A DNA stretch of 64,000 nucleotides, taken from the NCBI GenBank assembly GCA_002269645.1, contig NIVC01001370.1:1-64000 (forward strand), written 5' to 3'. Every line of letters begins with the position of its first letter. The stretch's first letter is position 1. The notes beneath the pieces were generated by a model, which had not been told where the DNA came from, ran no database searches, and saw nothing but the letters and a program-made list of their open reading frames with translations. Source of the DNA: Macrostomum lignano. Taxonomy: Eukaryota. The translations under genes were made by a program, and so were the position numbers. This document shows positions 1,516 through 63,234 of this stretch, in pieces.

Positions 1516-1613
1516 GTTAATTTTCTGACCCGTATTAAAATTTATATCATGGTATCCATTACAATAACAATGTGTGCTACAATAAGAAGATAAAAAAGCA
1601 ACAAACTGCTCAC

Positions 1614-2289
1614 CATCTGCTAATATCAGCTAGCGAAGCACCAGCCGTGGGATCTGGAGCGCCAGGCGAGTCCCTAATCTCATTGAACGCGGCAGATTTA
1701 GACAATAGATTATCCAACAATTGCTGAGCAGGTGGCAGTATGTCCGTCGGATTTAGGGACGACAATAGAAACTGGGCAAACTTTCTCAGTTGCACAGGCT
1801 GCAGAGTGTTCAGAGTCTCGCTAATCGGCGCATTCATTGGCACAGAGTTGGCATTCTTCACCCGGTGTAGGCAGACTGCCACCACGTGCTGGCACCAGAC
1901 TCTGTTAGCGGAGCCGCACGAGCAGGAGCACTTGACAATTCTGCACCGATCGAACGACAGCGCCACTTTGTATTGAGAGCCTGGCGCTGTGCAGTTACTA
2001 ACGCCGGGACATTTGGACACTTTGGCCAAGATTTGGAAGCCAATTTGAATGCAGTCGGACACAGCGCCCTGCCTATAGAGCTCTTCGCCTTGGGTGAACT
2101 CTTCATTAGATCCCGTGGCTAGACAGCAATATAGCCTAATATCGTCTTCGCTATCCGGAAAGGAGTAGAATGAGATTTTCAACTGCAACTCTTCCGGCAC
2201 TGGTGGGTGATGAGTTTCCACTAGTTCGAATGGCAACTTCTGGGCAATCACTTTGGCGCACAGGTTGGTCAGTTTAAGCAGGCCGCGAT
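1614..2289 (-). CDS. ZSWIM8: ZSWIM8 exon 2 (BC/Cullin-box region and SWIM zinc finger)
   Basis: PPVPEELQLKISFYSFPDSEDDIRLY, CSCSC...WCQHVVAVCL (SWIM CxC-x-CxH), GAPDPTAG; CAG acceptor 2292-2290, GTGAG donor 1613-1609. Confidence 0.95.
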
Positions 2290-15668: not shown

Positions 15669-16277
15669 TCAGCCCTTCCTATACCGATTCCCATCCCCCC
15701 GCCTATTAAAATCTTTCCAGTCGTCCCAGGCACGCAGGCGGCCCAACGCCTGCGGATCGTCGGCATCTTCGGCGGCGTCGCGGGCGGCTCGTTCAGCTGC
15801 GGCGCTCTCGGGAGTTGGGCCGCCAACAGGCGCGGGAGCCTCGCGAGCCGCCGCCGCAGCCTCCTCCGGGCTGGGGAAGACGCCGGATTCAATTTGAGCG
15901 TCGATCCATTCGTCAACAGAATAGGCTGGCAGGCTGGGGTAGCCGGCGCCAAATACGCGCGCTTCTAGCGCCGATCTGGTTAGCACAAAGGTACCCACTG
16001 GTGGGCGGCCGGATTTCGGCTGGGGCGGCTGAGGCGGCGGCTGCTGCTGGCCCTCAGCGCCACGGCTGGCCATCATGCGGGCCAGGGGTAGCTCAGCTTT
16101 AGCAGCGGCTGCCTCCTCGGTGGCCACAATGACCCAACGTTCCAACAGTTTCAGGTAGAAATTTCGCTTGTCCTCTTCGTCCACGTGAGGACGTTCGACT
16201 TGGGGGCGTAGCTCGGTCAGCTGCTTCTCGAGCTCCTTCCGCCGGCGTAATCGTTCGATTTTTTTAGCTCGATCGGG
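15669..16277 (-). CDS. IGBP1: IGBP1/alpha4/Tap42 exon 2
   Basis: CAG acceptor 16280-16278; PDRAKKIERLRRRKELEKQL, VFGAGYPSLP, RAWDDWKDFNRRGDGNR match Tap42-family motifs. Confidence 0.95.
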   Translation of the reverse strand, partial: PDRAKKIERLRRRKELEKQLTELRPQVERPHVDEEDKRNFYLKLLERWVIVATEEAAAAKAELPLARMMASRGAEGQQQPPPQPPQPKSGRPPVGTFVLTRSALEARVFGAGYPSLPAYSVDEWIDAQIESGVFPSPEEAAAAAREAPAPVGGPTPESAAAERAARDAAEDADDPQALGRLRAWDDWKDFNRRGDGNRYRKG

Positions 16278-16345
16278 CTGGATTGAGTTTTTTTATTTTA
16301 TTATCTATCAGCAATTTTCTTACTAACAGTGTGTAAAACTACTAG

Positions 16346-18360
16346 TACTTATTCAGCATGGATGAGGCTACTTATTCAGCATGGATGAGGCTACTTATTC
16401 AGCATGGATGAGGCTACTTATTCAGCATGAGTGAGGCTACTTATTCAGCATGGATGAGGCTACTTATTCAGCATGGATGAGGCTACTTATTCAGCATGGA
16501 TGAGGCTACTTATTCAGCATGAGTGAGGCTACTTATTCAGCATGGATGAGGCTACTTATTCAGCATGACTGAGGCTACTTATTCAGCATGACTGAGGCTA
16601 CTTATTCAGCATGACTGAGGCTACTTATTCAGCATGGATGAGGCTACTTATTCAGCATGAGTGAGGCTACTTATTCAGCATGGATGAGGCTACTTATTCA
16701 GCATGAGTGAGGCTACTTATTCAGCATGACTGAGGCTACTTATTCAGCATGAGTGAGGCTACTTATTCAGCATGGATGAGGCTACTTATTCAGCATGAGT
16801 GAGGCTACTTATTCAGCATGACTGAGGCTACTTATTCAGCATGGATGAGGCTACTTATTCAGCATGAGTGAGGCTACTTATTCAGCATGACTGATGCTAC
16901 TTATTCAGCATGGATGAGGCTACTTATTCAGCATGACTGAGGCTACTTATTCAGCATGGATGAGGCTACTTATTCAGCATGAGTGAGGCTACTTATTCAG
17001 CATGGATGAGGCTACTTATTCAGCATGGATGAGGCTACTTATTCAGCATGAGTGAGGCTACTTATTCAGCATGACTGAGGCTACTTATTCAGCATGGATG
17101 AGGCTACTTATTCAGCATGAGTGAGGCTACTTATTCAGCATGGATGAGGCTACTTTTCAGCATGAGTGAGGCTACTTATTCAGCATGACTGAGGCTACTT
17201 ATTCAGCATGGATGAGGCTACTTATTCAGCATGAGTGAGGCTACTTATTCAGCATGAGTGAGGCTACTTATTCAGCATGACTGAGGCTACTTATTCAGCA
17301 TGGATGAGGCTACATATTCAGCATGGATGAGGCTACTTATTCAGCATGAGTGAGGCTACTTATTCAGCATGGATGAGGCTACTTATTCAGCATGAGTGAG
17401 GCTACTTATTCAGCATGGATGAGGCTACTTATTCAGCATGGATGAGGCTACTTATTCAGCATGAGTGAGGCTACTTATTCAGCATGACTGAGGCTACTTA
17501 TTCAGCATGGATGAGGCTACTTATTCAGCATGAGTGAGGCTACTTATTCAGCATGACTGAGGCTACTTATTCAGCATGGATGAGGCTACTTATTCAGCAT
17601 GAGTGAGGCTACTTATTCAGCATGGATGAGGCTACTTATTCAGCATGAGTGAGGCTACTTATTCAGCATGACTGAGGCTACTTATTCAGCATGGATGAGG
17701 CTACTTATTCAGCATGAGTGAGGCTACTTATTCAGCATGAGTGAGGCTACTTATTCAGCATGACTGAGGCTACTTATTCAGCATGGATGAGGCTACATAT
17801 TCAGCATGGATGAGGCTACTTATTCAGCATGAGTGAGGCTACTTATTCAGCATGGATGAGGCTACTTATTCAGCATGAGTGAGGCTACTTATTCAGCATG
17901 GATGAGGCTACTTATTCAGCATGGATGAGGCTACTTATTCAGCATGAGTGAGGCTACTTATTCAGCATGGATGAGGCTACTTATTCAGCATGGATGAGGC
18001 TACTTATTCAGCATGAGTGAGGCTACTTATTCAGCATGGATGAGGCTACTTATTCAGCATGAGTGAGGCTACTTATTCAGCATGACTGAGGCTACTTATT
18101 CAGCATGAGTGAGGCTACTTATTTAGCATGGATGAGGCTACTTATTCAGCATGAGTGAGGCTACTTATTCAGCATGACTGAGGCTACTTATTCAGCATGG
18201 ATGAGGCTACTTATTCAGCATGGATGAGGCTACTTATTCAGCATGGATGAGGCTACTTATTCAGCATGAGTGAGGCTACTTATTCAGCATGGATGAGGCT
18301 ACTTATTCAGCATGAGTGAGGCTACTTATTCAGCATGGATGAGGCTACTTATTCAGCATT
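16346..18360. repeat. 23-bp minisatellite filling the IGBP1 intron (~87 copies)
   Basis: GAGGCTACTTATTCAGCAT followed by GGAT, GAGT or GACT. Confidence 0.97.
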
Positions 18361-18362
18361 AC

Positions 18363-18845
18363 CTGAGCCATGCTGCGACCATCGCCGCTATCCTCAGTCA
18401 CCAGAGCGGCCAATTTTTGCTCATCAGCTTCGCCCACCTCGGCATCGCCGATTCGAGGCGCCCCGGGCACGCCGTACAAGCCGGCCAGCCGAAGAAAGTC
18501 AGCAAGTTGGCCGAGACAGCGGACAAGACTGTCCGGCCGTGCGGCCGGCCCGCCAGTGCGCCGCTGAGACCACAGGAAGCCGGCAATGCCAGGCAATAAA
18601 AGATACTTCAACTCATTAGTGGGCACATCGTCCAACTGTTCATTAGAAGAGAACAAGCCTAACAGGCCAACTATTGACTGGGCTCGGCCGCAGAGTTCGA
18701 GCCCACGGTCAATTGGATCACCGACGCTTGCAGTGCTACCACCTCCTTCCAATGATTCATAGATGCTCATCAGCTCGCTGAATATTGCTGACAGGCTGTC
18801 TGCCGCAGCGTCAACAGTTGCGTCAGAATTTTGCGACTCGGACAT
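18363..18845 (-). CDS. IGBP1: IGBP1 exon 1
   Basis: LFSSNEQLDDVPTNELKYLLLP (Tap42 motif); CAG|GTAAT phase-0 donor; spliced product about 363 aa. Confidence 0.95.
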
Positions 18846-30910: not shown

Positions 30911-33002
30911 AAAGAAATGATACAATAATGGAATAATTACAATTGTATAACAACTATGTTATAATTGTCAATTAAGCCTATTTTTATACTAGGCCCATAA
31001 TTGGCAATTATTTTTTCATTTATTTTTATTAGTTTTTTGTATATTCTCCAACATAATTAAGGGACAATATTTCCTAATAGGCCTAGGTAGGCCCTATAGA
31101 TTTCCTATCAATGCTAATATGTTCCTTGAAATGCAACTCATGGCTCATACATATATGGCTATATTACTTTTTGACAAAAAGCCTAACATAGGCCTAAATG
31201 ATAACATTTATACAATGCTTCTTTAATATAACTCTAAGGTCTAAGCATGAAACAGACTAGACTATAGACGTATTTTTATAAATAAAAATTTAAATGAGCA
31301 GACTACATAGCCATTGATGTCATGGCTTACTGGGGGAATTGCTTGCTAAGAGGTCAAGGCTTATTAAGCCTAAGGGGGATTGCTAAGATGTGAGATATCA
31401 AGGCTTACTAAGAATTGTTTAGGTGTCAAGGCAAATAGGATTTACATAAATAATTTTTTAACATGCTTATTCAATAAGTTATTAGGTGCCCTAAAGCCAA
31501 GGCCAAAAGGCAACTAGATTGCTTGCTAGTTGCTAGTATAAATTATCCTATTGACATTGTCTAGTATTGACCTATAGTGATTTATTTTGTTTATATATAA
31601 CTTATAAAATATTAAATAGGACATATGGAATTAAATCGTACATAATTAAGAAACTTGAGACATAAGCATGTCAAAAATTTCTAATGTATTATTAATTAAG
31701 ATAGGCCTGCTAGACCTAATATAGTAATAAACAGCTTGTAAAATTTAAAATTTTTGGCTTAGCTAAGACAAGTTAGCTATATTATTATGCTAGCTACTAA
31801 AATACAAACAGGCGCTGAGGCGCAGAAGGCTGAGTTTGTTTGACGCTTAAAAACCGGAAGACAGAGAACTAACAGTTGGTGACTCGATTCATCATGAACA
31901 CAATAAAATACGATGCTGCGCCCGCGGCCCGTGCCCTGCACGGCTACTCTATAATAATAATTTTGCTTTGGCTATGCAGCAAAAAGTTAAAAAATGCTGA
32001 CTTTCCAAGACACTTTAGTTGATTATAACAAAGTTTCTCGCGGACTAGGACTCCCTCGGACAAGTGTCTGGAGCGCGGAAACAGAGAAATTTAGTGTTTA
32101 GATTCTTTTCCGCCACCTTTCTTGGATTTCCGTTCAAATGAGATGAGATCACAGCGTCTTGCAGGGGTTTTAGCGGGGCATAGCAGTAGAGAGGAATTAG
32201 TCACAGAGTTATAGCTGCTGTGAGTAAACAGGAGCTCGAATTTTGCAACATCTTGGACGTGCCATCAAAAATCAGGCGACAGGAGTAGAGGAGGAGTAGA
32301 GACCCACGCCGGGGCGTCGCCATCGGGAGGGACCATGTCGCCCCCCCCCACGCCTGTAAAAGCTATACGGGGAAACAACGGGGAGACATGCAATGCTTTT
32401 CATCCGCCCCATCTTGTGACTATCATGAAAATGAATAATGTTGGTTTGGGCGAAAAAATATAGCACCTGTGGCGAAAAAACCATCAGTGCATGAATACGG
32501 CGCTAATATTGAGTCCCTGGCTACGGCGCCAAAAAGGATCGAGTGTCTAGTGGCATCAAAATAGACCTGCTGGGGGCGAATAACACAACCGATTCCTAAA
32601 TAAAATAAGTAATCAAACACAAATTGGCGCGCACAACTCGATCCAGAAAACCCGCGAGCCACAATTCAGTCTCCACGTGCGTAAAAGAACACACAAAAAT
32701 ATAATTGAATTGACCACCAATTCATGTACGTCGTACAACCAATCAAACTAATACATATGTATCACTTGTTCTTCGACAATCCGGAGTTCCTCTTCCTGCA
32801 GAACTGCTGAAGCGGCGACCCCGACAGGGCAATCTTCGATCTGCCGGATAACACCGCCATTTCCATTCCATTTTAGGCTTTTCACCCTCGCTGAGGGTAT
32901 ATCCCTCACCCCACGGCGCTAGGGGTCGTCGGTGTCGCAGTTTCTTCTGTGTCTAGCCATGTTTGTCGCCGCCAGAGTTCTTTCGCAACCTGGACATTCT
33001 TT

Positions 33003-33733
33003 TCATTTTCTCTTGTAGACTCTCGCGGTGTTGCTGATGTTGGGTTCTACTGTGTTGTCATGTGAGCAACTGCGTCTGTGTCTTGCGATGTTTTTCCGGT
33101 GTATTCTTGCGCCACATCTTCCGCATATTCTCATCTCTCCTTCTGTTCTGTCAATTCCGTTACATGCTTTTCTGTGGTTCTTGAGAGTGTTCTCGCTCTT
33201 GAAAGTTGTGGTGCATATATTGCATTTAAACGTGACTTTCTGCTCTCGATGCATTCTCTTCATGTGGATTGCGAACCGCCTCGAGATTTACATTTTTTTA
33301 CCATCACATCCGGACCATTAGCAGATAAAATCTCCTTGCTGGTTACTGTTTTCTCGGTCCTTTCCAGTGTTTGTTCTCCGCTGTGTCGATGACCTCTTCT
33401 TTTCTCAAACTCTTCCATGTGTTTCATTCTCTCCATGATGGTCTCCTTCCATTTCTTTCTGTCCCTTGTTTCCTCTTTGATCCTCGTCCAGTCGATGTTC
33501 GCTTCCTTCAGTTTCTTCCAGTAAAAGAGGGTCTTCTTTTTCTTGCCTCGGCATTTCTTGATTTGTTCAAGATCTTTGAGCCGTCCTAGCGTTGCAATTT
33601 TAACCATTCTGCTGTTTTCCATGCGCATTATGTGACCGATCCTTTCGAGGGTCCTTTTTTCAATTTTCCACCTAATAGATTTGATCTCCAGTTCGTTTCT
33701 TATGTCTTGCATGTTAACTCGTTCTCGTTCCAT
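33003..33733 (-). mobile_element. 5'-truncated LINE C-terminus with C2H2-like zinc fingers
   Basis: KRTLERIGHIMRM (post-RT motif), CNICTTTFKSENTLKNHRKAC, CGRCGARIHRKNIARHRRSC; frameshifted. Confidence 0.75.
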
Positions 33734-33796: not shown

Positions 33797-34150
33797 TTGT
33801 TATAAACACCGCCCTGGGAGCCATGGCCAGCATCGTCCTGCCCATCTTCATGGCTTCTTTGGCAACAGCCCGACGGCCTATACGGAAGCTGAGACCCTTG
33901 ACGCGTCAGGGAATGTACTTTTCAGCGATTGCTCTCTCGGACAACTGCATTCTGTTCATGACAGGCTTTTTGTGGATGCTCTTAGCCAAGGGTCTGCCGT
34001 GGATCAGCGGGGCCAAGTACGGATTCTTCATCGTGACTGAGTCGAAGGGCGCTTGCAGAGTTATGCGCTACTTGGAGTCATTGTTCAGCCTCACGTCCAG
34101 CATCCTGTTCCTGATGATGGTGATCGACCGATGCCTGAGCGTTTACTTTC
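33797..34150 (+). pseudogene. Partial, deleted copy (TM1-TM3) of the GPCR at 40209-41465
   Basis: Near-identical INTALGAMASIVLPIF...VIDRCLSVYF with small deletions. Confidence 0.92.
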
Positions 34151-40208: not shown

Positions 40209-41465
40209 TCAGTTGTCGTGCTGCTGGGCGCCAGTGGCGCTATCAGACTTGCCAGCCGTGGAGGTAGTCGGCATATTCTTCTGGCCGGTGGCCGCTGGTC
40301 GGTTCGACCCCAGCGGCGCCTGCTGGCGACTTGGACCATCGTCGCAACAGACGCCGACGCCCAGGAAAGCGGCGCGGAATTGTCCGCTTTTCCAGAGCAG
40401 CACGATCCAGTTCACCGACTGGTTGAACAGAATTAGAATCCGGCCAATGTCGATGAGGCCCCAGACCAGCTTCTTGGTGCTCGGATTGATTTCTATGCTG
40501 GCCAAGGTCAGGATTAGATCAAAGACGATAGCCGCCACAGTAGGGCAGGAGCTGATGATGAGAATGGCGGACAGGGCCACGCAGATGACGGTGTTGGTCA
40601 GCTTGCCGTCACCCTGTCCAGCCCGGATCTCAGCTTGCTCCGACACGATGTGACGCATCTTGTGTATGAGAAACCCGTTAGCAATTAGGATGATAAAGAA
40701 CTGCACTGTAGGCGGGTACATCAGCAGCAGCATGTACGCGTAAAACGTAGTGTATTCCCAACCCTGCAGCAAAAAATAGCACACGGTGTACTTTCCCATT
40801 TCGATCCAGTGAAAGTGAACGCCAACTGGGATTGCGGCAAGAGTGCAGAACAACGAAGCAATCAGGCATCCTAGAAGAGTGGTCTTGGCCTTCACTTGTT
40901 GAAGCCGAAACGGAAAGTAAACGCTCAGGCATCGGTCGATCACCATCATCAGGAACAGGATGCTGGACGTGAGGCTGAACAATGACTCCAAGTAGCGCAT
41001 AACTCTGCAAGCGCCATTCGACTCATTCACGATGAAGAATCCGTACTTGGCCCCGCTGATCCACGGCAGACCCTTGGCTAAGAACATCCACAAGAAGCCT
41101 GTCATGAACAGAATGCAGTTGTCCGAGAGAGCAATCACTGAAAAGTACACTCCCTGACGCGTCAAGGGTCTCAGCTTCCACAGGTAGATGTAGGCCGTCA
41201 GGCTGTTGCCAAAGAAGCCGCCGGCCATGAAGATGGGCAGGACGATGCTGGCCATGGCTCCCAGGGCGGTGTTTATCCGGCAGAAGATCGCCCTGTCGGG
41301 GTCGCCGCTCCAGCAGTCCAGGAAGAGGAATTCCAGATTGTCGACGAATTGTCGCTCGCTTGAGGTGGTCTTGTTTGTCATACCGAACGTTATTGTCTGA
41401 GGAGTGTTTATAAGGTAAGTGTTTAAGTTGCTGAGGCAGCTGTTTACTGGCACCTTGCAATACAT
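40209..41465 (-). CDS. Rhodopsin-like (class A) orphan GPCR, peptide-receptor type, single exon (start may be MTNKTT at ~41381)
   Basis: Seven hydrophobic segments; GFFGN (TM1), IALSDN (TM2), Cys before TM3, VIDRC (DRY variant), NQSVNW (TM7). Confidence 0.92.
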   Translation of the reverse strand: MYCKVPVNSCLSNLNTYLINTPQTITFGMTNKTTSSERQFVDNLEFLFLDCWSGDPDRAIFCRINTALGAMASIVLPIFMAGGFFGNSLTAYIYLWKLRPLTRQGVYFSVIALSDNCILFMTGFLWMFLAKGLPWISGAKYGFFIVNESNGACRVMRYLESLFSLTSSILFLMMVIDRCLSVYFPFRLQQVKAKTTLLGCLIASLFCTLAAIPVGVHFHWIEMGKYTVCYFLLQGWEYTTFYAYMLLLMYPPTVQFFIILIANGFLIHKMRHIVSEQAEIRAGQGDGKLTNTVICVALSAILIISSCPTVAAIVFDLILTLASIEINPSTKKLVWGLIDIGRILILFNQSVNWIVLLWKSGQFRAAFLGVGVCCDDGPSRQQAPLGSNRPAATGQKNMPTTSTAGKSDSATGAQQHDN

Positions 41466-42515: not shown

Positions 42516-42829
42516 GTTTATCAGAGAAATAGCAATCAAAGCTTTGTAGTGCGTTGTACGAGTGTAGAAGTTGGACTCTCATAGCCGTATATTTGAGCAT
42601 ATATAGATTTGGTATATATAGTAGTGAACGCAGCGTGAGCAAACGTTACAGCGAGAGCAAAGATGAGAGATCAGACAGTATATAGTACAGCTACTCAGCC
42701 ATTTCATGATTGATGAATTATGATTGACGATTGGTGCTAAATGACTCAGCATCCTATATACTAAAAATTTTTACAACTAAATTTAGACGTATATTTATTA
42801 TAAGGCACAAATATGTACTAAAACATAGT

Positions 42830-43055
42830 TCAACTGAGTTCTTGAGTTGACTGCATGACCAGCTTGTGCAGCCAGTCAATCATCAGGTAGTCTCGCAGAT
42901 AGCGACGCTCACGGAGCTCGTGCGGCACCGGCGGCAGCAGACCGTCTGGCAGCCGGGCGCTCTGTGAGGCGGCTGCAGGGTCATCGAAGTGGCTCTCTAC
43001 GTAGTCGAAGGCCTGTGCCAAATTCTGTCTGATGAATCGCAGCTGGTTTAGCCAC
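42830..43055 (-). CDS. Orphan secreted helical protein, exon 3
   Basis: TTTGCCAG acceptor, phase 2; WLNQLRFIRQNLAQ...RDYLMIDWLHKLVMQSTQELS*. Confidence 0.75.
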
Positions 43056-43099
43056 CTGGCAAATATGGCGAAAGTGATTTTATACAGCAGATTATTCAC

Positions 43100-43147
43100 C
43101 TGTAGCACCTGAAGTGTTCTAACTCTGATCTATTAAAGAGATTGCAG
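43100..43147 (-). CDS. Orphan secreted helical protein, 48-nt exon 2 (CNLFNRSELEHFRCYR)
   Basis: Branch point CACTAAC plus CCCTGTAG acceptor; AG|GTGAAT donor; symmetric phase 2-2. Confidence 0.65.
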
Positions 43148-43239
43148 CTACAGGGGTTAGTGAGAGAAGTTTTATAATTAGATTTGAGCTTTCTGAAGAA
43201 ATTATGTGACAGTTTTCTAAAGCCAAATAGTGACTGGAA

Positions 43240-43452
43240 CTTGGCTGAAGCAATAGTTTCCCTAAAGCAGTTACAGTTTCCCTGAAGTATTTACAGTTTC
43301 CCTGAAGCAAGTATAGTTTTTTCTGAAGCAATTGCAGTTTCCCTGAAGTATTTACAGTTTCCCTGAAGCAATTACAGTTTTTCTGAAGCAGTTGCAGTTT
43401 CCTTGAAGCAATTACAATTTTTCTGAATCAATTACAGTTTTTCTGAAGCAAC
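43240..43452. repeat. 20-bp intronic repeat
   Basis: CAGTTTCCCTGAAGCAATTA-like units. Confidence 0.85.
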
Positions 43453-43520
43453 CATATAGCGACTTGCACTTTCCAGAATGGAGCTCAGCGAATAACAGAA
43501 AGCGGCAGCTGAAGACTCAC

Positions 43521-43834
43521 CAAGTCTCATGCGGCTCCTCTTGACTCTCCAGACGCCGAACAATGAGCAGAACTCGATGCAGCTGAGCATGCCGGCTGGC
43601 ACCAGACGGCAGCAGTTCGGAGAAGTCCATCAGAGACTTACTGATGGACTTGTTCAGCAGGCGAACCAATCTGATGCTCTCGCCGTAGGCTTGCAACCCA
43701 TCCGCAGCGTGAGTCAGGTGCTTCTTTGCCAGCTCCAAGTTTCTCTCTGTCGGTTTTGCGCGGCCAACAGGTTGAGCAGAGGCAAGCGAGACGGCGAGGC
43801 AGAGGACAGCAAAGAACTTTTCTTTGGAAAGCAT
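43521..43834 (-). CDS. Orphan secreted helical protein, exon 1 with signal peptide
   Basis: ACAATG start; MLSKEKFFAVLCLAVSLASA|QP signal peptide; TG|GTGAG donor. Confidence 0.78.
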
Positions 43835-44319
43835 TGTTTCAATATTAATGCTTGCTTGAATTACTTTCTGCTTCTAGAGGAGGAGTTTTAATTGCTTGAT
43901 TGGAAGTTCCCTCAGCTGTGATTTTTTTATAGCGCTGCCCGCTCCGGCGGACGATCCGTCCGAGGCATTGGAAAAGCCGCAGGCGCCTAGGAATTCCCGA
44001 GGCGGCAGCCGGTCGCCCTCCGGAACGGCAAGCGTAGGCGGAGAGTAGCGGTGAGCCGGTGAGCTCTGCTGAGCACCCGTACTCACTCAGACACGAGCAG
44101 TTAGCAGCAGGGTGAGAGATACGGCAGAGATATTGGCGAGAATCAGTGCAGAGGGCTACGGAGGGAGGGGGTTGGGAGGCCGTTGCGCACTGCGGCATTG
44201 TGGAACAAAAATAGCTGGATTCTCCAACCCAGGCTCAGCTGGTCTGGCGTGAGCTGGCGCACTGATCAGTTCCTGGAAATTCGAATTGAGTTCGCTCGGG
44301 GCTGTTCTGGCGGCTAAGA

Positions 44320-55486: not shown

Positions 55487-56230
55487 TTAGTGTAGTTTGC
55501 GAATTTTCCCCATAGTTTTCTTTTTTTGGGCCACTGCACGCAGGTTCTTCATTTCACGTCGGCACCAATGGTGCAGCCGTAGGTGAGCAAAATTTTTAAA
55601 AACCTGATTATGCACCCGCGTGTGATGCAGCTCGCAGGCAGGCAGTGCTACTAATTGTTCCCGGAGGTGGTTAACAAACCGAGCTGCCACACGAGGCTGG
55701 ATTATGAAGCTGGATGTCAGGGCTGCGAACTCGGCTTCCATCTTCATAAATGCAACAAGCGCCACCGGCGAGGGCGCAGTCAACCCGCGGAATGCATGCG
55801 AGTAGGTCTTGTGCTGGATGTGAACCCCTGCAGATTCGGATGCTGTAAGCAAAGAGTTGCACACCTGACAGTGAAGAACTCGGCTTCGCTTTAGCACATA
55901 TCCGCCAACGTACTCAGCAGCTTCCAGCGAGACATTGCTTGCGCCCTGCCAGGAGTCCAGTTTTTTTTGGAGCAGCTGCTGCTGTGGTGCCTGGCATACA
56001 ACACTGCTTGAGTTCTGTGGACCCGCTTTGGTAGTCACACAGTCTCCGGCACCGGTGGGGGCGCAGGCTGCTATGATGGCAGCCTCACAGTTGTCGTCTT
56101 CGCAGTTGCGAGACGTCGAGTCAGGCTGGGCCAGGCCGCTGGTAGCCACGGACCGCAGGGCACCGACGAAGGAGCTGAGCTCTGGTCTGTCGTTAAAACC
56201 GTTGTGCCCGCGGATGATGCAGAAAAGGTT
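55487..56230 (-). CDS. P-element/THAP9-like transposase, last exon
   Basis: CTTCAG acceptor; NLFCIIRGHNGFNDRP continues QDHVE (P-family QDxxENxFxxIR); EYVGGYV; C-terminal Cys/His motifs. Confidence 0.88.
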   Translation of the reverse strand, partial: NLFCIIRGHNGFNDRPELSSFVGALRSVATSGLAQPDSTSRNCEDDNCEAAIIAACAPTGAGDCVTTKAGPQNSSSVVCQAPQQQLLQKKLDSWQGASNVSLEAAEYVGGYVLKRSRVLHCQVCNSLLTASESAGVHIQHKTYSHAFRGLTAPSPVALVAFMKMEAEFAALTSSFIIQPRVAARFVNHLREQLVALPACELHHTRVHNQVFKNFAHLRLHHWCRREMKNLRAVAQKKKTMGKIRKLH

Positions 56231-56373
56231 CTGAAGAGGAGAATTGTACGATGCCCTTTGTTTCATCAATGCAAATTCTTGTACATTGCTGAACCACTAA
56301 TTAGGGTGAAGTAATCTTTAAATATTTAATTATGGAAATATAGTCTCGCTTTTAATAAATTTTGTGAACTTAC

Positions 56374-57696
56374 CTCAACGTGATCTTGAGTAAATCGGCG
56401 AGTACACACGTCGTCAAAGTGGTGGTCCCGAATGAGAGTAGTGCACAGCTGCTTGGTAGCAGAAAGCGATAGGAGCCACCCTTCTTTGAATGGCATCGTA
56501 GGCTTAACAGCGCGCCCATTCAGTGGGAGAAAGCGCCAGCTCCGCACGAAGTCTTCCGCCTCTGTCAGACGGTCGATCTGCGCAGATAGAGTATCGCGAT
56601 GAATCGGCTGCTGGAAGCCTTTGCCATAGAGATGCGCTGAGTTCAGCATGTCGAAAATGTCATTCAGACGCTTCGCAAATTCAGCTGTCTGCAACGCATC
56701 CTCAGATAACTCATTATGATGGACCAAAGTCCTGATACCACTTGCAACAGAATGGCTTAACACTTGTGCTGCGAGCGATACTTTCATCTTCTGACCCAGA
56801 GCTAAGCTGAAATGAGCGTCGGTGAGCTTGCTTGCTAATCGGAGAGATGGGCCGCTGTCGTTCTGATAAAACTGGATGAGATGCTGCCACTTAGCTAGCT
56901 TGCACTCGTTGAATTTGATGTCGTTCTTCATCAGGGCGTTTCTAGCATTTTTTAGGCAATGTGGGATGTCCACGATGACGTAGACTGGCTCACCGGTTAC
57001 AGGGTGACGTAAAAAAGGATTTGCAGTGTCAGCCCGTCTGGAAAGGTGAGCCCACTGGGTTGACTCTTGATCCGCAACCAGTGCAACGACCTTAATCCCG
57101 GCCTTGTGGCTAGCTGTCAGGCACTCATCAATAGCTATCCCGAATCCTTCTTGGCCAAGAGTTCGAAAAACAGGATAATATGCGATTGGTTGTTTCCAGT
57201 CCTGAAAGACTCCTCGAAGCACAGCGACGATGGCCTCGTTTACAGGTCTGGGCAACTGCTCCTTGCTGTCATCAGCGGTTCGTGGATCGCAGCCCACCAC
57301 CACGTCACGATGTTGCTGGTAGCGCAGGCTGGGTGTGAGACTCATTCCATCGAAGCAAAGGGTAGCAATCCGCTGCTGATTTGTCGATGATGCATCAAAC
57401 TTGGACTGCAAGGATCGTATCGTCAAGTTGCAAATCCCAGGCAATACGAAATACTGTCGAATTCGCCGCCTAATTGTCGAACTTGATGGTAGCGGAATTT
57501 TCCACTTATTGCGGACCAGTCGGTAAGCTGACGAGCCTTTGTGATGCAGCTGAATTGAGCACGCAATGTCTTTTTTGGTCCAGCGCATGCCGCGACTGCG
57601 AACATCACGCCTGATCTTCTGCTGCATCAGACGAGTAGCTATTGAGCTGCTGCTACCCGACTGGACTGCTTTTGCTTTTTCTATTCGCGCTTGCAT
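56374..57696 (-). CDS. P-element/THAP9-like transposase catalytic core
   Basis: LPSSSTIRR, CFDGMSL, VADQES, DIPHCLKNARN, KMKVSLAAQVLSHSVA, FDMLNS; GAG|GTAAG donor. Confidence 0.92.
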
Positions 57697-58226
57697 CTGT
57701 CGGATGGTGGTTTTTTGGCGGCGAACTTTGCTGCGCAGCTGAGCGATGATGTTATTGCTTCGTTGTTCAGCATGACCTTGGTTGGTTGGGCTGTTGGCAT
57801 TGTCTGCTGCTCTTCGGCCTGTGGCGGCTCACCATCGGTGCTGTTGAATGGCTGCAGTTCAGGTGGATAGAGATTGTCAGCCTCTTCGTCACTGCGAAAA
57901 ACCAAATGTGTCAGGTCATGTGCAATGAGGCGGGGTAGAGTCAGCTCCCTGTCTGGAACGGCATTCCATCGCAAACGTGTGGTATATTCATGTCGCAGAG
58001 AAGGACAGCTGTAATCATTGTCAGTAAAATGCACACTGCACACTCGCAATCCCATCTTGCGAATGGCTCCGATGTCCAAGTCGATTTCCAGCATTTGCCT
58101 CCATCGATTCGCAACTCCGTCGTCCGCTGGAAACCTGTGCATTCGCACAGCCACTCCCTCGTCCGTTAGAGATTGCGCTGTATGGGTGCAGGTGGCTGCA
58201 CAGCAGCGCTTTGAGCTGAATTCCAT
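57681..58226 (-). CDS. THAP zinc-finger N-terminus of the transposase (different frame from the core)
   Basis: CCAATC...HRFP...RW...VCSVHF...LRWNAVP = C2CH THAP signature; ATG at 58226. Confidence 0.88.
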   Translation of the reverse strand: MEFSSKRCCAATCTHTAQSLTDEGVAVRMHRFPADDGVANRWRQMLEIDLDIGAIRKMGLRVCSVHFTDNDYSCPSLRHEYTTRLRWNAVPDRELTLPRLIAHDLTHLVFRSDEEADNLYPPELQPFNSTDGEPPQAEEQQTMPTAQPTKVMLNNEAITSSLSCAAKFAAKKPPSDRCKRE

Positions 58227-58538
58227 GTCAGTATGGTGATTGCAAGAAGCGTTGCTGGTGTTTTTGTCGTTCTTGCACTGCTTGCTGGTAAAGTGCGAAG
58301 TAAAATCTTCTCTTTCTCCGTCCTGCCTTATTACTTTAAACTCCGTATCTCGTCCCACTTGACTGCTAGCTAGAAACGAAGTCAATCGATTTCTTCGACT
58401 GTCTATGGCCAAGACCAACGCCTTTTTGGGGTGGGTGCAGATTTTACTAGTGGTTTTTACGCCTGAGAATTCCGATCCACTGCCAAGCTTGGCCATAGAT
58501 AAAAGAATTGAAAGCGCCAAGGTTGTGCGCGTGTGACG

Positions 58539-58923
58539 CATAGATAAAGTATACATAGATTCCACCCCTCCCCAGAATGTACACACGCTCGTGTCCAAAC
58601 TTTGACCACCATAAAACTCACCGTGCTCTCATTGGCTGGCGCGAAAGCCTTCCTTTCAACCCCTTCGATTTCATTCCCTCACCCCTTCCACACAAGAAAG
58701 CTTTATAACTTTAATGCGCGGAACGAAAGGATGTCTTACCAGTTTCAACAGTTTAGCAAGAATGAAGTCGACACGCAAGTGTTCCGGAGTTGGGGGAATG
58801 TACACACGTGGACTCAATGTGCATAGCGTGGCCCAGCCAATAGGAGCGCAGTGAATAAAGTGATGGTCACAATTTAGACACTCCGCGGGGGCAGGGGTGG
58901 AATCTATGTATACTTTATCTATG
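58539..58923. mobile_element. P-like MITE with 30-bp perfect TIR and 8-bp TSD
   Basis: TIR CATAGATAAAGTATACATAGATTCCACCCC; TSD GTGTGACG at 58531-58538 and 58924-58931. Confidence 0.92.
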
Positions 58924-60066: not shown

Positions 60067-60665
60067 TCAGATTTTCAGTGGCGTATTAACAACGCTGCCG
60101 TAGCGGCCTCGTTTGCTGCTGGCGCCACCGGCGCGCCTCGATTTTGGCGTCGTAGCGGCGCCGGCAGCCGCGCCGGCTCCGCGCTTACCAGGCGGACGTC
60201 CGGGACGCTTGCGACCACCGGCCGTTTGACCGGCTTCCGGTTGCTTCTTCCGCTTATCCTCCATGGCGACTTCGGCATTCGAATCGGCACTGGCTTTCGA
60301 CGAGCTTTCCTCAAAGCCGCCGGCGCCTCCGCTGCGGCAGGCGCGACCGAAAAATTTCGGCAGCAACTGGCGCCGCAACAGAACCCGATCGATGACGTAA
60401 TCGCTGGCGCCGGCGCCGGCTGATGGCGCCGCTAGGGCGCCAAGTTCGACTAGCTTTTTAACCAGACTGCCGGCCGATTGGACGGGCACAGACAGGCGCT
60501 CGGACAGGCGGCCGGGTGTCACGGGATCGTTGAGTTCCAGTAGGGCGTTGAGCGCGGCGCGGACCAGACAGAATGAGCGCCGTTCGACAGGGGCGCGCAT
60601 TCGCTGCAGCAGCTGGTCGTGCGAATTGTCGGCCAGATTGCCGGTTTCGCAGAGAAATTTCGACT
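60067..60665 (-). CDS. HORMAD1: HORMAD/Hop1-like last exon: winged-helix-like domain and basic tail
   Basis: CTCTGCAG acceptor; VTPGRLSERLSVPVQSAGSLVKKLVELGAL wHTH-like pattern; C-terminal GRYGSVVNTPLKI*. Confidence 0.8.
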
Positions 60666-60779
60666 CTGCAGAGCGGAGAGAGTGGGAAGGCGGTAACAAG
60701 TGAATGCACAAGTGCTCAGGCCGATAGATAGAGATATGAATGCCTGACCATTCTAAAATATGCCTGAAAAAATAAGAAA

Positions 60780-61190
60780 CGTACCTAAACAAAGACATAC
60801 CGGCACAAAGGCATACTATCGTATTTGAACATGCACACATACCGGAACAGACACATACCTGAATTAAGATACATGCCGAAAAAAAACTAACCAGAACAAA
60901 GACACATACCTGAATAAAGACACATGCCGAAAAAAGACACACTGGAACAAAGACACATACCTGAATAAAGACATACTGGAACAAAGACATACTGGAATAA
61001 AGACATACTGGAACAAAGACACATACCGGAACAAACACACATACTAGAACAAAGACACATACTGTAACAAACACATATCTGAATAAAGACATACTGGAAT
61101 AAAGACATACAGGAACAAAGACACATACCGGAACAAAGACACATACCGGAACAAAGACACACACCGGAACAAAGAGACATACCGAGTATC
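60780..61190. repeat. ~18-22 bp intronic repeat (GGAACAAAGACACATACC)
   Basis: Tandem copies inside the 636-nt intron 60666-61301. Confidence 0.85.
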
Positions 61191-61301
61191 CGAGCAAAAA
61201 TACATTGAAGCGAACAAAGTACAAAACAGACACTGGTATGCATTTGAACAGAAAACACCTCAGTCCGTAAGGATACCCGTCTAAACAAAAACACCGCTTA
61301 C

Positions 61302-61705
61302 CAATGCAGACCTCGCAATAGTGCACAGGGGGCGCTTCGCTCTCCCGCAGGATGCCAAAGCAGACTGCGTGCTGCCACAGTTCGCAGGCCTCGCAGCGGA
61401 TCATGATGCCCATGTCGGCGTCCCGCTCGCACGGACAGCGAACCGACAGCTCCTCTTCTTCATCATCGCCGATGTCGCCAGCCTCTTCATTATCGGCAAC
61501 AGCTGATCCGCTTAAATTATTGTTATTAGCGTCCGATAATTCGGACACTTCAGACGGCGAAACCGCGGCGGCGGCGGCCCCAGAAGCGGGCGTCAGTTGT
61601 TTATTTGGCCTGGCCTTCTTGCCTTGCTGCTGGCGCTTAGAGTTAGACTTGTTGCTAGCCGAATCGCGGAAATAATCCCGACCGGTTGACAGCATCATGT
61701 GGAAG
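61302..61705 (-). CDS. HORMAD1: HORMAD exon: end of HORMA, linker and PHD finger
   Basis: VRCPC...IRCEACELWQHAVCFG...HYCEVC (C4HC3); CCCCAG acceptor, G|GTAAG donor. Confidence 0.88.
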
Positions 61706-62158: not shown

Positions 62159-62382
62159 GCGGATATATTAGGAGTCAAAAACAAGCAAGCAGAACAATGA
62201 AACAGAGGTGAGGGTATAAACTAAATAATTTTCAATAACAGAAAAAATCAACATAGAAAAATTCAGCAGTAAACCAAAATATAAACAACAAAATCTAATA
62301 GCATAGCAACCCAAATACGAGCTAAAGGTAAAGCAACCTCCAAAAATCATTGCTATGAAAAATGAGCCAATATTGTACATAC

Positions 62383-62393
62383 CCATTGAATTT
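62383..62393 (-). CDS. HORMAD1: 11-nt microexon (K-F-N-G) of HORMAD
   Basis: TTTTCAG|AAATTCAATGG|GTATGT; needed to keep frame between flanking exons. Confidence 0.75.
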
Positions 62394-62498
62394 CTGAAAA
62401 AAGAAATAGAGTACCGATATGGTTAAAACTTGAGCGACAAGAATAAAATGGCAGGGAAAATTCAAAATCCCGACAGCCAAATTAAACTGCGAACTCAC

Positions 62499-62599
62499 GG
62501 TGAACACGTCGCCAAGCCGCAACTCGATCTCCTCCTCGGGCAGGCGGGCTGGGCTGTCCGGGTCAGCGCGGAAGCCGGGCGGCTCGTATTCATCTGGGG
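62499..62599 (-). CDS. HORMAD1: HORMA domain exon ([10 protein letters not shown]...LRLGDVFT)
   Basis: Matches the HORMAD TPPDYQPPGF motif; CAG acceptor, GTGAG donor. Confidence 0.92.
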
Positions 62600-62604
62600 C
62601 TGGG

Positions 62605-62672
62605 TATAGATGGATAGATAGATGGATATATAGATAGATAGATAGATAGATAGAAAGATATATGGATAGATG

Positions 62673-62719
<47 letters not shown>

Positions 62720-62784
62720 GGATAGATAGATAGATAGATAGATAGATGGATAGATAGATAGATAGATAGATAGAAAGATATATG

Positions 62785-62851
<67 letters not shown>

Positions 62852-62852
62852 G

Positions 62853-62886
<34 letters not shown>

Positions 62887-62890
62887 CAGA
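62605..62890. repeat. (GATA)n microsatellite filling an intron
   Basis: Direct inspection. Confidence 0.97.
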
Positions 62891-62897
62891 CACTCAC

Positions 62898-63194
62898 TGT
62901 TTCCATTGTAGAATAGCCTCATCTTCATCACCACATTGTCGGTCAGCGGGGCGACGGTCTGAGAAGCCATGATAATGGTCCGCAGAAGTCGGATTGTCGC
63001 GTCGCGAATGGCCTCGTGCGACGTGACGCCGGGAGGAGCAGTCTGCTGCTGGCGTTTGCGCTGCTGCTGTTGCTGCAGCTGTTCTTGGCTGCTGCTCAGA
63101 TCGCAGCTGGCGAACATGTCCTGCGACATGGCGTCCATTCCGGAACTGCAATGAGCGGATAAGTGCGCATGGGCGACAGGTTTTTCGGCGAATC
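62898..63194 (-). CDS. HORMAD1: HORMA domain exon; upstream exons lie beyond the window
   Basis: [32 protein letters not shown] matches HORMAD/Hop1 LxRxLxxxxQxLxPLPxxxxxxMKLxY; A|GTGAG donor. Confidence 0.88.
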
Positions 63195-63234
63195 CTTGTA
63201 ACACAGGCCGCGTGGTTTAATGCCAAGTAAGCTG

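What the first reader, a model, noticed from the sequence alone, without database searches (positions are those of the whole stretch)
42830..43834. Candidate long-chain four-helix cytokine (IL-6/G-CSF/Unpaired-like layout) hidden as a 3-exon orphan gene
Seen: canonical splicing (314+48+226 nt; a CACTAAC branch point; a 44-nt intron) yields a 195-aa protein the ORF track misses. It has a signal peptide, then amphipathic helix A (ERNLELAKKHLTHAADGLQAY), a long loop, helix B (HAQLHRVLLIVRRLE), a Cys-containing short link (ETCC...FRCY), helix C (WLNQLRFIRQNLAQAFDYVESH), a Pro-rich long loop and terminal helix D (RYLRDYLMIDWLHKLVMQSTQELS). Established: the long-short-long loop spacing and ~190-aa size typify class I long-chain helical cytokines, which diverge beyond BLAST detection. 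Inference: a JAK/STAT-pathway ligand candidate, a class poorly known in flatworms.
Basis: partly seen in the sequence, partly recalled or inferred. Interest (0 to 1): 0.75.

Follow-up and report, generated by a model that had tools for sequence, protein, structure and literature searches.

The report
Unannotated secreted helical protein gene, flatworm
The proposed three-exon gene is really readable in this Macrostomum lignano sequence and probably encodes a small secreted, helix-rich orphan protein, but nothing beyond that general shape ties it to the cytokines.

Summary
The window is bases 1-64000 of Macrostomum lignano contig NIVC01001370.1.

For a real gene:
- CCAAT and TATA boxes upstream and AATAAA 31 nt after the stop.
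- GC content steps up at the borders of exons 1 and 3.
- The proposed frame scores best of six in both large exons.
- The N-terminus is a textbook signal peptide; only 2 of 100 window ORFs pass my crude rule.
- Amphipathic alpha-helical periodicity is well above shuffles (z=3.1) and absent from the antisense ORF.

Weak points:
- Exon 2 looks like intron by composition, and skipping it keeps the frame (179 aa).
- The 'long A-B loop' contains a further predicted amphipathic helix.
- The B-C link is 23 residues, not short.

No relative turned up in Pfam, PDB, 5.8 billion proteins, 1.84 billion representatives or metagenomes.

Best reading: an unannotated, lineage-restricted secreted helical protein. 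I put the cytokine or JAK/STAT ligand reading at about 7%. No expression evidence was available.

The parts
43967..43971 (-). CCAAT box, about 36 nt upstream of the TATA box, inside a GC-rich block (0.58-0.73 GC)
   Evidence: Read directly from the sequence; GC profile. Its function is inferred.
43922..43931 (-). TATAAAAAAA box, 88-97 nt upstream of the ATG. It implies a transcription start near 43900 and a 5'UTR of about 65 nt.
   Evidence: Inferred promoter, not verified.
43521..43834 (-). Exon 1 (314 nt): ATG at 43834-43832 with A at -3. Encodes residues 1-104 plus 2 nt of codon 105. Donor TTG|GTGAGT.
   Evidence: GC 0.55 with GC1>GC3>GC2. Coding score +0.12 bits/codon, best of six frames. 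Amphipathic periodicity z=3.5.
43775..43834 (-). Signal peptide, residues 1-20 (MLSKEKFFAVLCLAVSLASA|QPV): n-region with K4 and K6, 11-residue hydrophobic core, A-S-A cleavage motif
   Evidence: Crude von Heijne-type rule; 2 of 100 window ORFs pass. SignalP was not available.
43148..43520 (-). Intron 1 (373 nt, GC 0.38), GTGAGT...CACTAACCCCTGTAG
43255..43451 (.). 20-nt tandem repeat, about 9.8 copies, inside intron 1
   Evidence: TRF; self-matches. Repeat-filled introns occur elsewhere in the window, for example in the TAP42 gene.
43100..43147 (-). Putative exon 2 (48 nt, in-frame cassette, residues 105-121). It holds all three mature cysteines and the sequon N110-R-S. This is the weakest part of the model.
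   Evidence: Good flanking splice signals, but GC 0.41 and coding score -0.40, like intron. Skipping it keeps the frame.
43056..43099 (-). Intron 2 (44 nt microintron, GTGAAT...TTTGCCAG)
   Evidence: Microintrons under 75 nt are reported for flatworms including M. lignano (PMC6530080).
42830..43055 (-). Exon 3 (226 nt including the TGA stop at 42832-42830): residues 121-195, helices C and D, and a Pro-rich linker
   Evidence: GC 0.58, coding score +0.28, best of six frames. AF2 on this piece gives helices at residues 123-142, 147-153 and 171-194, pLDDT 68.
42794..42799 (-). AATAAA polyadenylation signal, 31 nt after the stop, in an AT-rich 3' flank (GC 0.22)
   Evidence: Inferred, not verified.

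Best explanation
This is a real but unannotated, lineage-restricted gene of Macrostomum lignano, with two or three exons.

Proposed working (inferred unless a call is cited):
- RNA polymerase II starts about 30 nt downstream of a CCAAT/TATA promoter.
- The pre-mRNA loses a 373-nt repeat-bearing intron and a 44-nt microintron. Alternatively it loses one 465-nt intron, skipping the 48-nt cassette.
- The 195-aa (or 179-aa) product enters the ER through a cleavable 20-residue signal peptide.
- It can be N-glycosylated at N61 (NKS), and at N110 (NRS) if exon 2 is included.
- It leaves the cell as a basic protein of about 20 kDa (pI about 8.5), built from five to seven mostly amphipathic alpha-helices that pack into a helical bundle.

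It acts outside the cell. The most likely role, on base rates for this species, is a taxon-restricted secretory product of a gland or reproductive tissue. Less likely, it is a soluble ligand. Its exact biochemical role cannot be assigned from sequence.

Shown: the reading frame, the signals, the composition steps and the helical periodicity. Inferred: transcription, junction usage, secretion, fold and role.
For: - Source: the window is M. lignano contig NIVC01001370.1, bases 1-64000.
- Gene model: it reproduces exactly.
- Flanking signals: CCAAT, TATA, A at -3 of the ATG, and AATAAA after the stop.
- GC content: 0.50-0.77 in exons 1 and 3, against 0.28-0.42 in the introns and 0.22-0.35 in the 3' flank, with the steps at the proposed borders.
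- Coding score: the proposed frame is best of six in both large exons, with scores in the range of conserved exons of the same window.
- Signal peptide: the crude rule is passed by only 2 of 100 ORFs.
- Helical periodicity: the mean helical hydrophobic moment of the mature protein exceeds 2000 shuffles (z=3.1, P=0.002), with its spectral peak at 100-110 degrees. The antisense ORF shows none (z=-0.3).
- Structure: AF2 on the window-exact pieces predicts helices at residues 30-49, 54-67, 81-99, 123-142, 147-153 and 171-194.
- Intron size: microintrons are known in this species (PMC6530080).
- Base rate: orphan secreted proteins are common among M. lignano gland products. Of 76 prostate-limited transcripts, 31 had no BLAST hit, and 38 of 65 had signal peptides (PMC5977470).
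Against: - No transcript evidence could be consulted.
- The protein is absent from the NCBI M. lignano protein set held in the database. That set is incomplete, however: the neighbouring 418-aa GPCR ORF is missing too.
- The codon score is largely a proxy for GC. The exon 1 frame ranks only 37th of 162 open frames, and its antisense ranks 34th.
- Exon 3 alone shows no significant amphipathic periodicity (z=1.0).
- There is no paralogue in the window and no relative anywhere, so conservation, the best evidence for function, is missing.
- Confidence in the AF2 piece models is low (pLDDT 56 and 68).
Confidence: 0.6

Rival explanations
1. One reading: a long-chain class I helical cytokine. The protein would be an up-up-down-down four-helix bundle that binds a Domeless/gp130-like receptor and activates JAK/STAT.
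For: - The protein is secreted and has 175 mature residues.
- Main helices of 19-24 residues lie at positions 30-49, 81-99, 123-142 and 171-194, with 31- and 28-residue connections A-B and C-D. These are long enough for overhand loops.
- Short extra helices inside those two connections also occur in IL-6 and G-CSF (my own knowledge).
- Planarians have a STAT homologue, and authors ask whether secreted interferon-like factors exist (PMC8797187).
Against: - No Pfam cytokine family matches at E<=10.
- No cytokine appears among PDB sequence hits at E<=10, and no relatives exist at all.
- The A-B 'loop' helix (54-67, extending to about 72 by hydrophobic moment) is the most amphipathic segment of the protein. 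It joins helix A by only 4 residues, which suggests an ordinary antiparallel hairpin.
- The B-C link is 23 residues with exon 2 included.
- The cysteine pattern is unlike IL-6 or G-CSF: an odd number (3), all in the doubtful exon 2.
- Foldseek searches with the piece models give no cytokine, though these searches are not informative.
- STAT signalling is reported absent in Echinococcus (PMC6426264). A 2026 survey traced an IL6R-like receptor no further back than Mollusca and gives conflicting statements on JAK and STAT in Platyhelminthes (PMC13203501).
- The layout is not specific to cytokines.
Confidence: 0.07
2. Not a functional protein-coding gene. The two open frames and their signals would be a chance constellation, a decayed gene, or a young proto-gene that makes no stable protein.
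For: - The gene is unannotated in GCA_002269645.1, and no homologue exists anywhere.
- The window holds 246 open frames of 70 or more codons.
- The codon score is not discriminating, and an antisense ORF of 120 aa overlaps exon 1.
- The region is surrounded by tandem repeats and transposon remnants; about 23% of the window is tandem repeat.
Against: - Independent signals coincide: promoter boxes, signal peptide, a consensus donor exactly at the end of the ORF, a frame-compatible downstream ORF, and AATAAA.
- GC steps fall at the exon borders.
- The frame-specific score is best of six, twice.
- The helical amphipathic periodicity (P=0.002) is absent from the antisense frame. A never-translated sequence is not expected to show this.
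Confidence: 0.22
3. A prohormone. The secreted precursor would be cut by furin-type or PC-type convertases at R169-E-R-R172 (and perhaps at RR93-94 or KK37-38). That would release a 23-residue C-terminal helical peptide (YLRDYLMIDWLHKLVMQSTQELS) that acts on a receptor, possibly a GPCR.
For: - There is a signal peptide plus an exact R-X-R-R motif immediately before the last helix.
- An orphan rhodopsin-type GPCR ORF lies 1.4 kb downstream on the same strand. This is proximity only.
Against: - No Gly-basic amidation motif and no repeated peptide copies are present.
- The other dibasic pairs lie inside predicted helices.
- The whole chain shows bundle-like amphipathic periodicity, which is unusual for spacer regions of prohormones.
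- No similarity to any peptide family was found.
Confidence: 0.05

Closest known systems
Long-chain class I helical cytokines (IL-6, G-CSF, LIF, CNTF, leptin, growth hormone group)
   Same: A secreted, small protein (about 175 mature residues), predicted all-alpha, with four main helices of about 20 residues. The first-to-second and third-to-fourth connections are long, and short extra helices are predicted inside those connections.
   Different: No sequence or profile similarity. The helices are shorter than the roughly 25-30 residues typical of long-chain members (my own knowledge). The cysteine pattern differs. The B-C link is 23 residues if exon 2 is used. Topology is untested and no receptor is known.
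Drosophila Unpaired ligands (Upd1-3), the only well-established protostome JAK/STAT cytokines
   Same: Secreted, basic, with N-glycosylation sequons, predicted helical, and lineage-restricted with no detectable vertebrate homologue.
   Different: Upd proteins are about twice as long (around 400 aa, my own knowledge). The 5.8-billion-protein search, which includes insects, found no similarity. No Domeless-like receptor has been shown for M. lignano.
Orphan secreted products of M. lignano glands, e.g. the prostate-limited Mlig-pro transcripts (PMC5977470)
   Same: Same species, a signal peptide, no homologue and no domain. In that study 31 of 76 such transcripts had no BLAST hit and 38 of 65 had signal peptides.
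   Different: This is a class defined by expression pattern, not by sequence. The expression site of the present gene is unknown, and I could not compare it with the Mlig-pro sequences.

Membership tests
Long-chain class I helical cytokines | Secreted protein of about 160-200 mature residues | tested here: met
   The signal-peptide-like N-terminus passes the crude rule. The mature chain is 175 aa and 20.4 kDa. SignalP itself was not available.
Long-chain class I helical cytokines | Four long amphipathic helices A-D as the core | tested here: inconclusive
   AF2 on the exon pieces gives six helices of 20, 14, 19, 20, 7 and 24 residues, at pLDDT 56 and 68. Helix D has a low hydrophobic moment of 0.20, and the extra helix 54-67 has the highest, 0.62.
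Long-chain class I helical cytokines | Up-up-down-down topology with two overhand loops | not testable with these tools
The piece models cannot show topology, and Foldseek searches with them found nothing.
Long-chain class I helical cytokines | Match to a cytokine sequence family or to a solved cytokine | tested here: not met
   Pfam gave 0 families at E<=10. PDB phmmer at E<=10 gave only NqrC and RPT4 noise. These families are known to diverge beyond sequence detection, so this is a weak negative.
Long-chain class I helical cytokines | Family-typical disulfides (IL-6 and G-CSF: two, in the A-B loop/helix B region; my own knowledge) | tested here: not met
   The mature cysteines are C105, C106 and C119 only. 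All three lie in the B-C link encoded by the doubtful exon 2, none lies in residues 21-104, and the number is odd.
Long-chain class I helical cytokines | Cognate receptor with a cytokine-receptor homology domain, plus JAK and STAT, in the same genome | not testable with these tools
   The genome outside the window cannot be searched here. Literature: STAT is present in a planarian; STAT signalling is absent in Echinococcus; a receptor is traced only to Mollusca, and statements on flatworm JAK/STAT conflict.
Unpaired (Upd) ligands | Sequence similarity to insect Upd proteins, and a size of about 400 aa | tested here: not met
   No hit at E<=0.01 among 5.8 billion proteins. The length is 195 aa.
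Neuropeptide or peptide-hormone precursors | Signal peptide plus basic cleavage sites flanking short peptides, often with a Gly for amidation or repeated copies | tested here: inconclusive
   A signal peptide and one exact RXRR site (169-172) are present. There is no Gly-basic motif and no repeats, and the other dibasic pairs lie inside predicted helices.
Taxon-restricted secreted gland products of M. lignano | Signal peptide and lack of homologues or domains | tested here: met
Taxon-restricted secreted gland products of M. lignano | Expression limited to a gland or reproductive tissue | not testable with these tools
   No expression data were reachable. As a control, the protein database holds no M. 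lignano transcriptome-derived proteins even for ZSWIM8.

The most novel reading that the evidence does not exclude
The protein is a true four-helix, up-up-down-down cytokine of a free-living flatworm. That would make it the first spiralian ligand of the class I helical cytokine type, acting through an as yet unrecognised receptor and the STAT that planarians are reported to possess.
Probability: 0.07. Interest if true: 0.75.

Novelty: new member of a known kind. Interest (0 to 1): 0.25.

Why it matters
If the gene is real, it adds one more unannotated orphan secreted protein to M. lignano. That is useful for annotation and for screens of gland, seminal-fluid or signalling proteins, but it is ordinary for this species.

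It would matter much more only if the full-length fold turned out to be a cytokine bundle. No helical cytokine is known from flatworms or any spiralian, and authors working on planarian antiviral responses explicitly ask whether secreted interferon-like factors exist upstream of STAT (PMC8797187). The present evidence does not raise that possibility above a low prior.

Tried and rejected
- Full-length protein handed to structure prediction, the search of protein representatives and the look-up of encoding contigs. I did not work around this and used window-exact exon pieces instead.
- phmmer of the mature exon 1 piece against 1.84 billion representatives: 0 hits.
- The search for homologous proteins with the 195-aa protein: none at E<=0.01.
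- Metagenome scan: none.
- tblastn and blastn within the window for a paralogue: none.
- Foldseek of the two piece models against PDB: E>=4 or nothing, which is uninformative.
- Exact look-up of the exon 1 ORF and of the GPCR ORF in assemblies: not on record.
- I hoped to reach a duplicated copy of the locus through the neighbouring GPCR. That GPCR has no database relative at E<=1e-20, so no second locus could be fetched.
- Codon-usage ranking of all open frames turned out to be mostly a GC proxy, so I gave it little weight.
- Enumerating all single-intron models gave 135 frame-keeping combinations. Only 43521->43055 has good signals on both sides. A GTAAGT inside exon 1, at 43641, pairs only with poor acceptors.
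- I rejected resemblances of the C-terminal helix to glucagon or PTH-type peptides that I recalled from memory. They are a few residues with inconsistent spacing.
- Rfam over the whole window: no family.
- Pfam on the antisense and upstream ORFs: nothing.

Full report
**Where the window comes from**

A conserved SWIM-finger exon at 1610-2251(-) is 100% identical to the NCBI protein 'BOX15_Mlig019515g1, partial [Macrostomum lignano]'. That protein lies on contig NIVC01001370.1 of assembly GCA_002269645.1, at coordinates equal to the window's own.

The window is typical of this genome:
- About 23% of it is tandem repeat.
- It holds remnants of transposons of the P-element/THAP9, piggyBac and mariner types, together with an RT-like ORF.
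- It holds a few conserved genes: TAP42, a ZSWIM8-like gene, a PHD-finger gene and a 317-aa CUEDC2-like gene.

**The observation**

| Part | Coordinates | Length | Signals |
|---|---|---|---|
| Exon 1 | 43834..43521 | 314 nt | donor TTG\|GTGAGT |
| Intron 1 | 43520..43148 | 373 nt | ends CACTAACCCCTGTAG |
| Exon 2 | 43147..43100 | 48 nt | donor CAG\|GTGAAT |
| Intron 2 | 43099..43056 | 44 nt | ends TTTGCCAG |
| Exon 3 | 43055..42830 | 226 nt | includes the TGA stop |

The CDS is 588 nt and encodes 195 aa. A 20-nt tandem array of about 10 copies sits inside intron 1.

Two known introns of the same window give a yardstick for splice sites. ZSWIM8 has GAAG|GTAAGA at its donor and TTTAAACAG| at its acceptor, and TAP42 has CTCAG|GTAATG. 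The candidate's sites are of the same quality. A 44-nt intron is acceptable here, because microintrons under 75 nt are described for flatworms including M. lignano (PMC6530080).

**Is it more than chance?**

Several independent features coincide.
- *Promoter and 3' signals.* Upstream there is a GC-rich block with CCAAT (43971-43967) and TATAAAAAAA (43931-43922). The ATG has A at -3. AATAAA lies 31 nt after the stop, in a very AT-rich flank.
- *GC steps.* GC content is 0.50-0.62 across exon 1 and reaches 0.77 in exon 3. It falls to 0.28-0.42 in the introns and to 0.22 after the stop, with the steps at the proposed borders.
- *Coding score.* I trained a codon-usage score on five conserved ORFs of the window. 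The proposed frame is the best of six for both exon 1 (+0.12 bits/codon) and exon 3 (+0.28). These values fall within the leave-one-out range of the genuine exons (0.06-0.41), and both exons show the GC1>GC3>GC2 pattern.
- *Signal peptide.* The N-terminus MLSKEKFFAVLCLAVSLASA|QPV passes a crude signal-peptide rule that only 2 of 100 ATG-ORFs of 60 aa or more in the window pass.
- *Helical periodicity.* The mature protein has a mean helical hydrophobic moment well above 2000 composition-preserving shuffles (z=3.1, P=0.002; exon 1 part z=3.5). The spectral peak is at 100-110 degrees. The 120-aa antisense ORF over exon 1 shows nothing (z=-0.3). I count this periodicity as the best sequence-internal sign that this strand and frame are translated into a folded helical protein.

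Two caveats apply. The codon score is largely a GC proxy when all 246 open frames are ranked: exon 3's frame is 15th of 162 and exon 1's frame is 37th, next to its own antisense. Exon 3 alone is not significantly periodic.

**Weak points of the model**

- Exon 2 is a 48-nt in-frame cassette with intron-like composition (GC 0.41, score -0.40).
- Splicing 43521 directly to 43055 also keeps the frame and gives 179 aa. That isoform lacks all three mature cysteines and the N110 sequon.
That is very short by general knowledge of metazoan splicing.
- Which junctions are used can only be settled with RNA data.

**The protein**

The mature chain is 175 aa, 20.4 kDa and pI 8.5, with Leu at 16% and Arg at 10%. 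It has sequons at N61 and N110 and cysteines at 105, 106 and 119. An exact furin-type R169-E-R-R172 sits just before the last helix.

AlphaFold2 was run without an alignment on the two window-exact pieces only.

| Piece | Predicted helices (protein residues) | pLDDT |
|---|---|---|
| Exon 1, mature part | 30-49, 54-67, 81-99 | 56 |
| Exon 3 | 123-142, 147-153, 171-194 | 68 |

The layout, however, differs from the one described:
- The supposed long A-B loop contains the most amphipathic segment of the whole chain (moment 0.62 around residues 55-72). Only four residues join it to helix A.
- With exon 2 included, the B-C link is 23 residues, so it is not short.
- Helix D is hydrophobic rather than amphipathic (moment 0.20).

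**Relatives**

None were found.
- Pfam: 0 families at E<=10.
- PDB sequences at E<=10: only noise, and no cytokine.
- 5.8 billion clustered proteins: none at E<=0.01.
- Exhaustive phmmer of the mature exon 1 part against 1.84 billion representatives: 0 hits.
- JGI metagenome contigs: none.
- A paralogue in the window: none.

The protein is also missing from the NCBI protein set of this assembly. That absence says little, for two reasons:
- The neighbouring intronless 418-aa GPCR ORF is not in the database either.
- The ZSWIM8 control found only the single NCBI copy at 100%, with the next hit at 53%. The database therefore holds no transcriptome-derived M. lignano proteins.

**The cytokine reading**

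A secreted, helix-rich protein of about 175 residues with two long connections is compatible with a long-chain helical cytokine. Mini-helices inside the A-B and C-D loops occur in IL-6 and G-CSF too (my own knowledge). So the layout does not exclude the idea.

It is not specific, though, and nothing else supports it:
- There is no profile similarity.
- The cysteine pattern is foreign.
- The A/A' hairpin-like spacing points as easily to an ordinary antiparallel bundle.
- The defining feature, the topology, is untested.

Foldseek searches with the two low-confidence piece models returned nothing usable.

On the pathway side, the literature is unsettled:
- A planarian STAT homologue exists, and the authors ask whether secreted interferon-like factors exist (PMC8797187).
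- STAT signalling is reported absent in Echinococcus (PMC6426264).
- A 2026 survey finds IL-6 only in vertebrates and an IL6R-like receptor no further back than Mollusca. Its statements on JAK and STAT in Platyhelminthes conflict (PMC13203501).

I put the cytokine reading at about 7%.

**What it most likely is**

Orphan secreted proteins are common in M. lignano. Among 76 prostate-limited transcripts, 31 had no BLAST hit, and 38 of 65 translated products had signal peptides (PMC5977470).

- **Best explanation (about 0.6):** an unannotated, lineage-restricted gene for a secreted, glycosylated helical-bundle protein of about 20 kDa that works outside the cell. It is more probably a gland or reproductive secretion than a hormone-like ligand.
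- **Rival, no functional gene (about 0.22):** supported mainly by the lack of any conservation or expression evidence.
- **Rival, prohormone cut at RERR (about 0.05).**
- **Rival, the cytokine (about 0.07).**

**Verdict**

Interest is low to moderate. The finding would rise sharply only if a full-length model showed an up-up-down-down bundle and M. lignano proved to have a matching receptor.

Noticed in passing
window 40209-41465 (-); 33802-34150 (+); 32769-32858: An intronless 418-aa rhodopsin-type GPCR ORF (Pfam 7tm_1/Srsx) lies 1.4 kb downstream of the candidate on the same strand. It has no database relative at E<=1e-20, so it too appears unannotated. A partial inverted copy (94% nt identity over 364 nt) lies 6 kb away, beside an RT-like ORF (33260-33733).
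   Followed up: partly
window 15669-18845 (-): The two coding blocks of the TAP42/alpha4 gene are separated by an intron almost wholly filled by a 23-nt x 88-copy tandem array (16346-18359). This is the same architecture, on a larger scale, as intron 1 of the candidate.
   Followed up: partly
window 43529-43891 (+): A 120-aa ATG-ORF lies antisense to exon 1. It has no Pfam match and no amphipathic periodicity. I take it to be a by-product of the sense-strand coding composition.
   Followed up: yes
window 43874-43885 (-): A polypyrimidine run ending in TAG (ctcctcctctag|AAGCAG) sits in the presumed 5'UTR, 40 nt upstream of the ATG. It could be a spliced-leader trans-splice acceptor; 39% of M. 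lignano genes are trans-spliced according to PMC5730564.
   Followed up: no
window 43319-43330 region of protein: residues 169-172 (exon 3, about 42899-42910): An exact furin-type R-E-R-R motif lies directly before the C-terminal helix. If it is used, a 23-residue helical peptide would be released.
   Followed up: partly
window 55487-58598 (-): Three consecutive ORFs carry THAP, TNP-like RNase H and GTP-binding insertion domains. This is a P-element/THAP9-like transposase broken into pieces, or interrupted by introns.
   Followed up: partly
window 60067-61698 (-) and 62322-63204 (-): A long ORF with a PHD finger runs straight through an 18-nt tandem array, translated as VCVFVP repeats (60835-61184). 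Neighbouring ORFs run through (ATAG)n. These stretches are probably introns that happen to stay open, and they could mislead ORF-based annotation.
   Followed up: no
whole window: About 23% of the 64 kb is tandem repeat, in 27 arrays with periods of 4-128 nt. No Rfam family reaches its gathering score anywhere in the window.
   Followed up: yes
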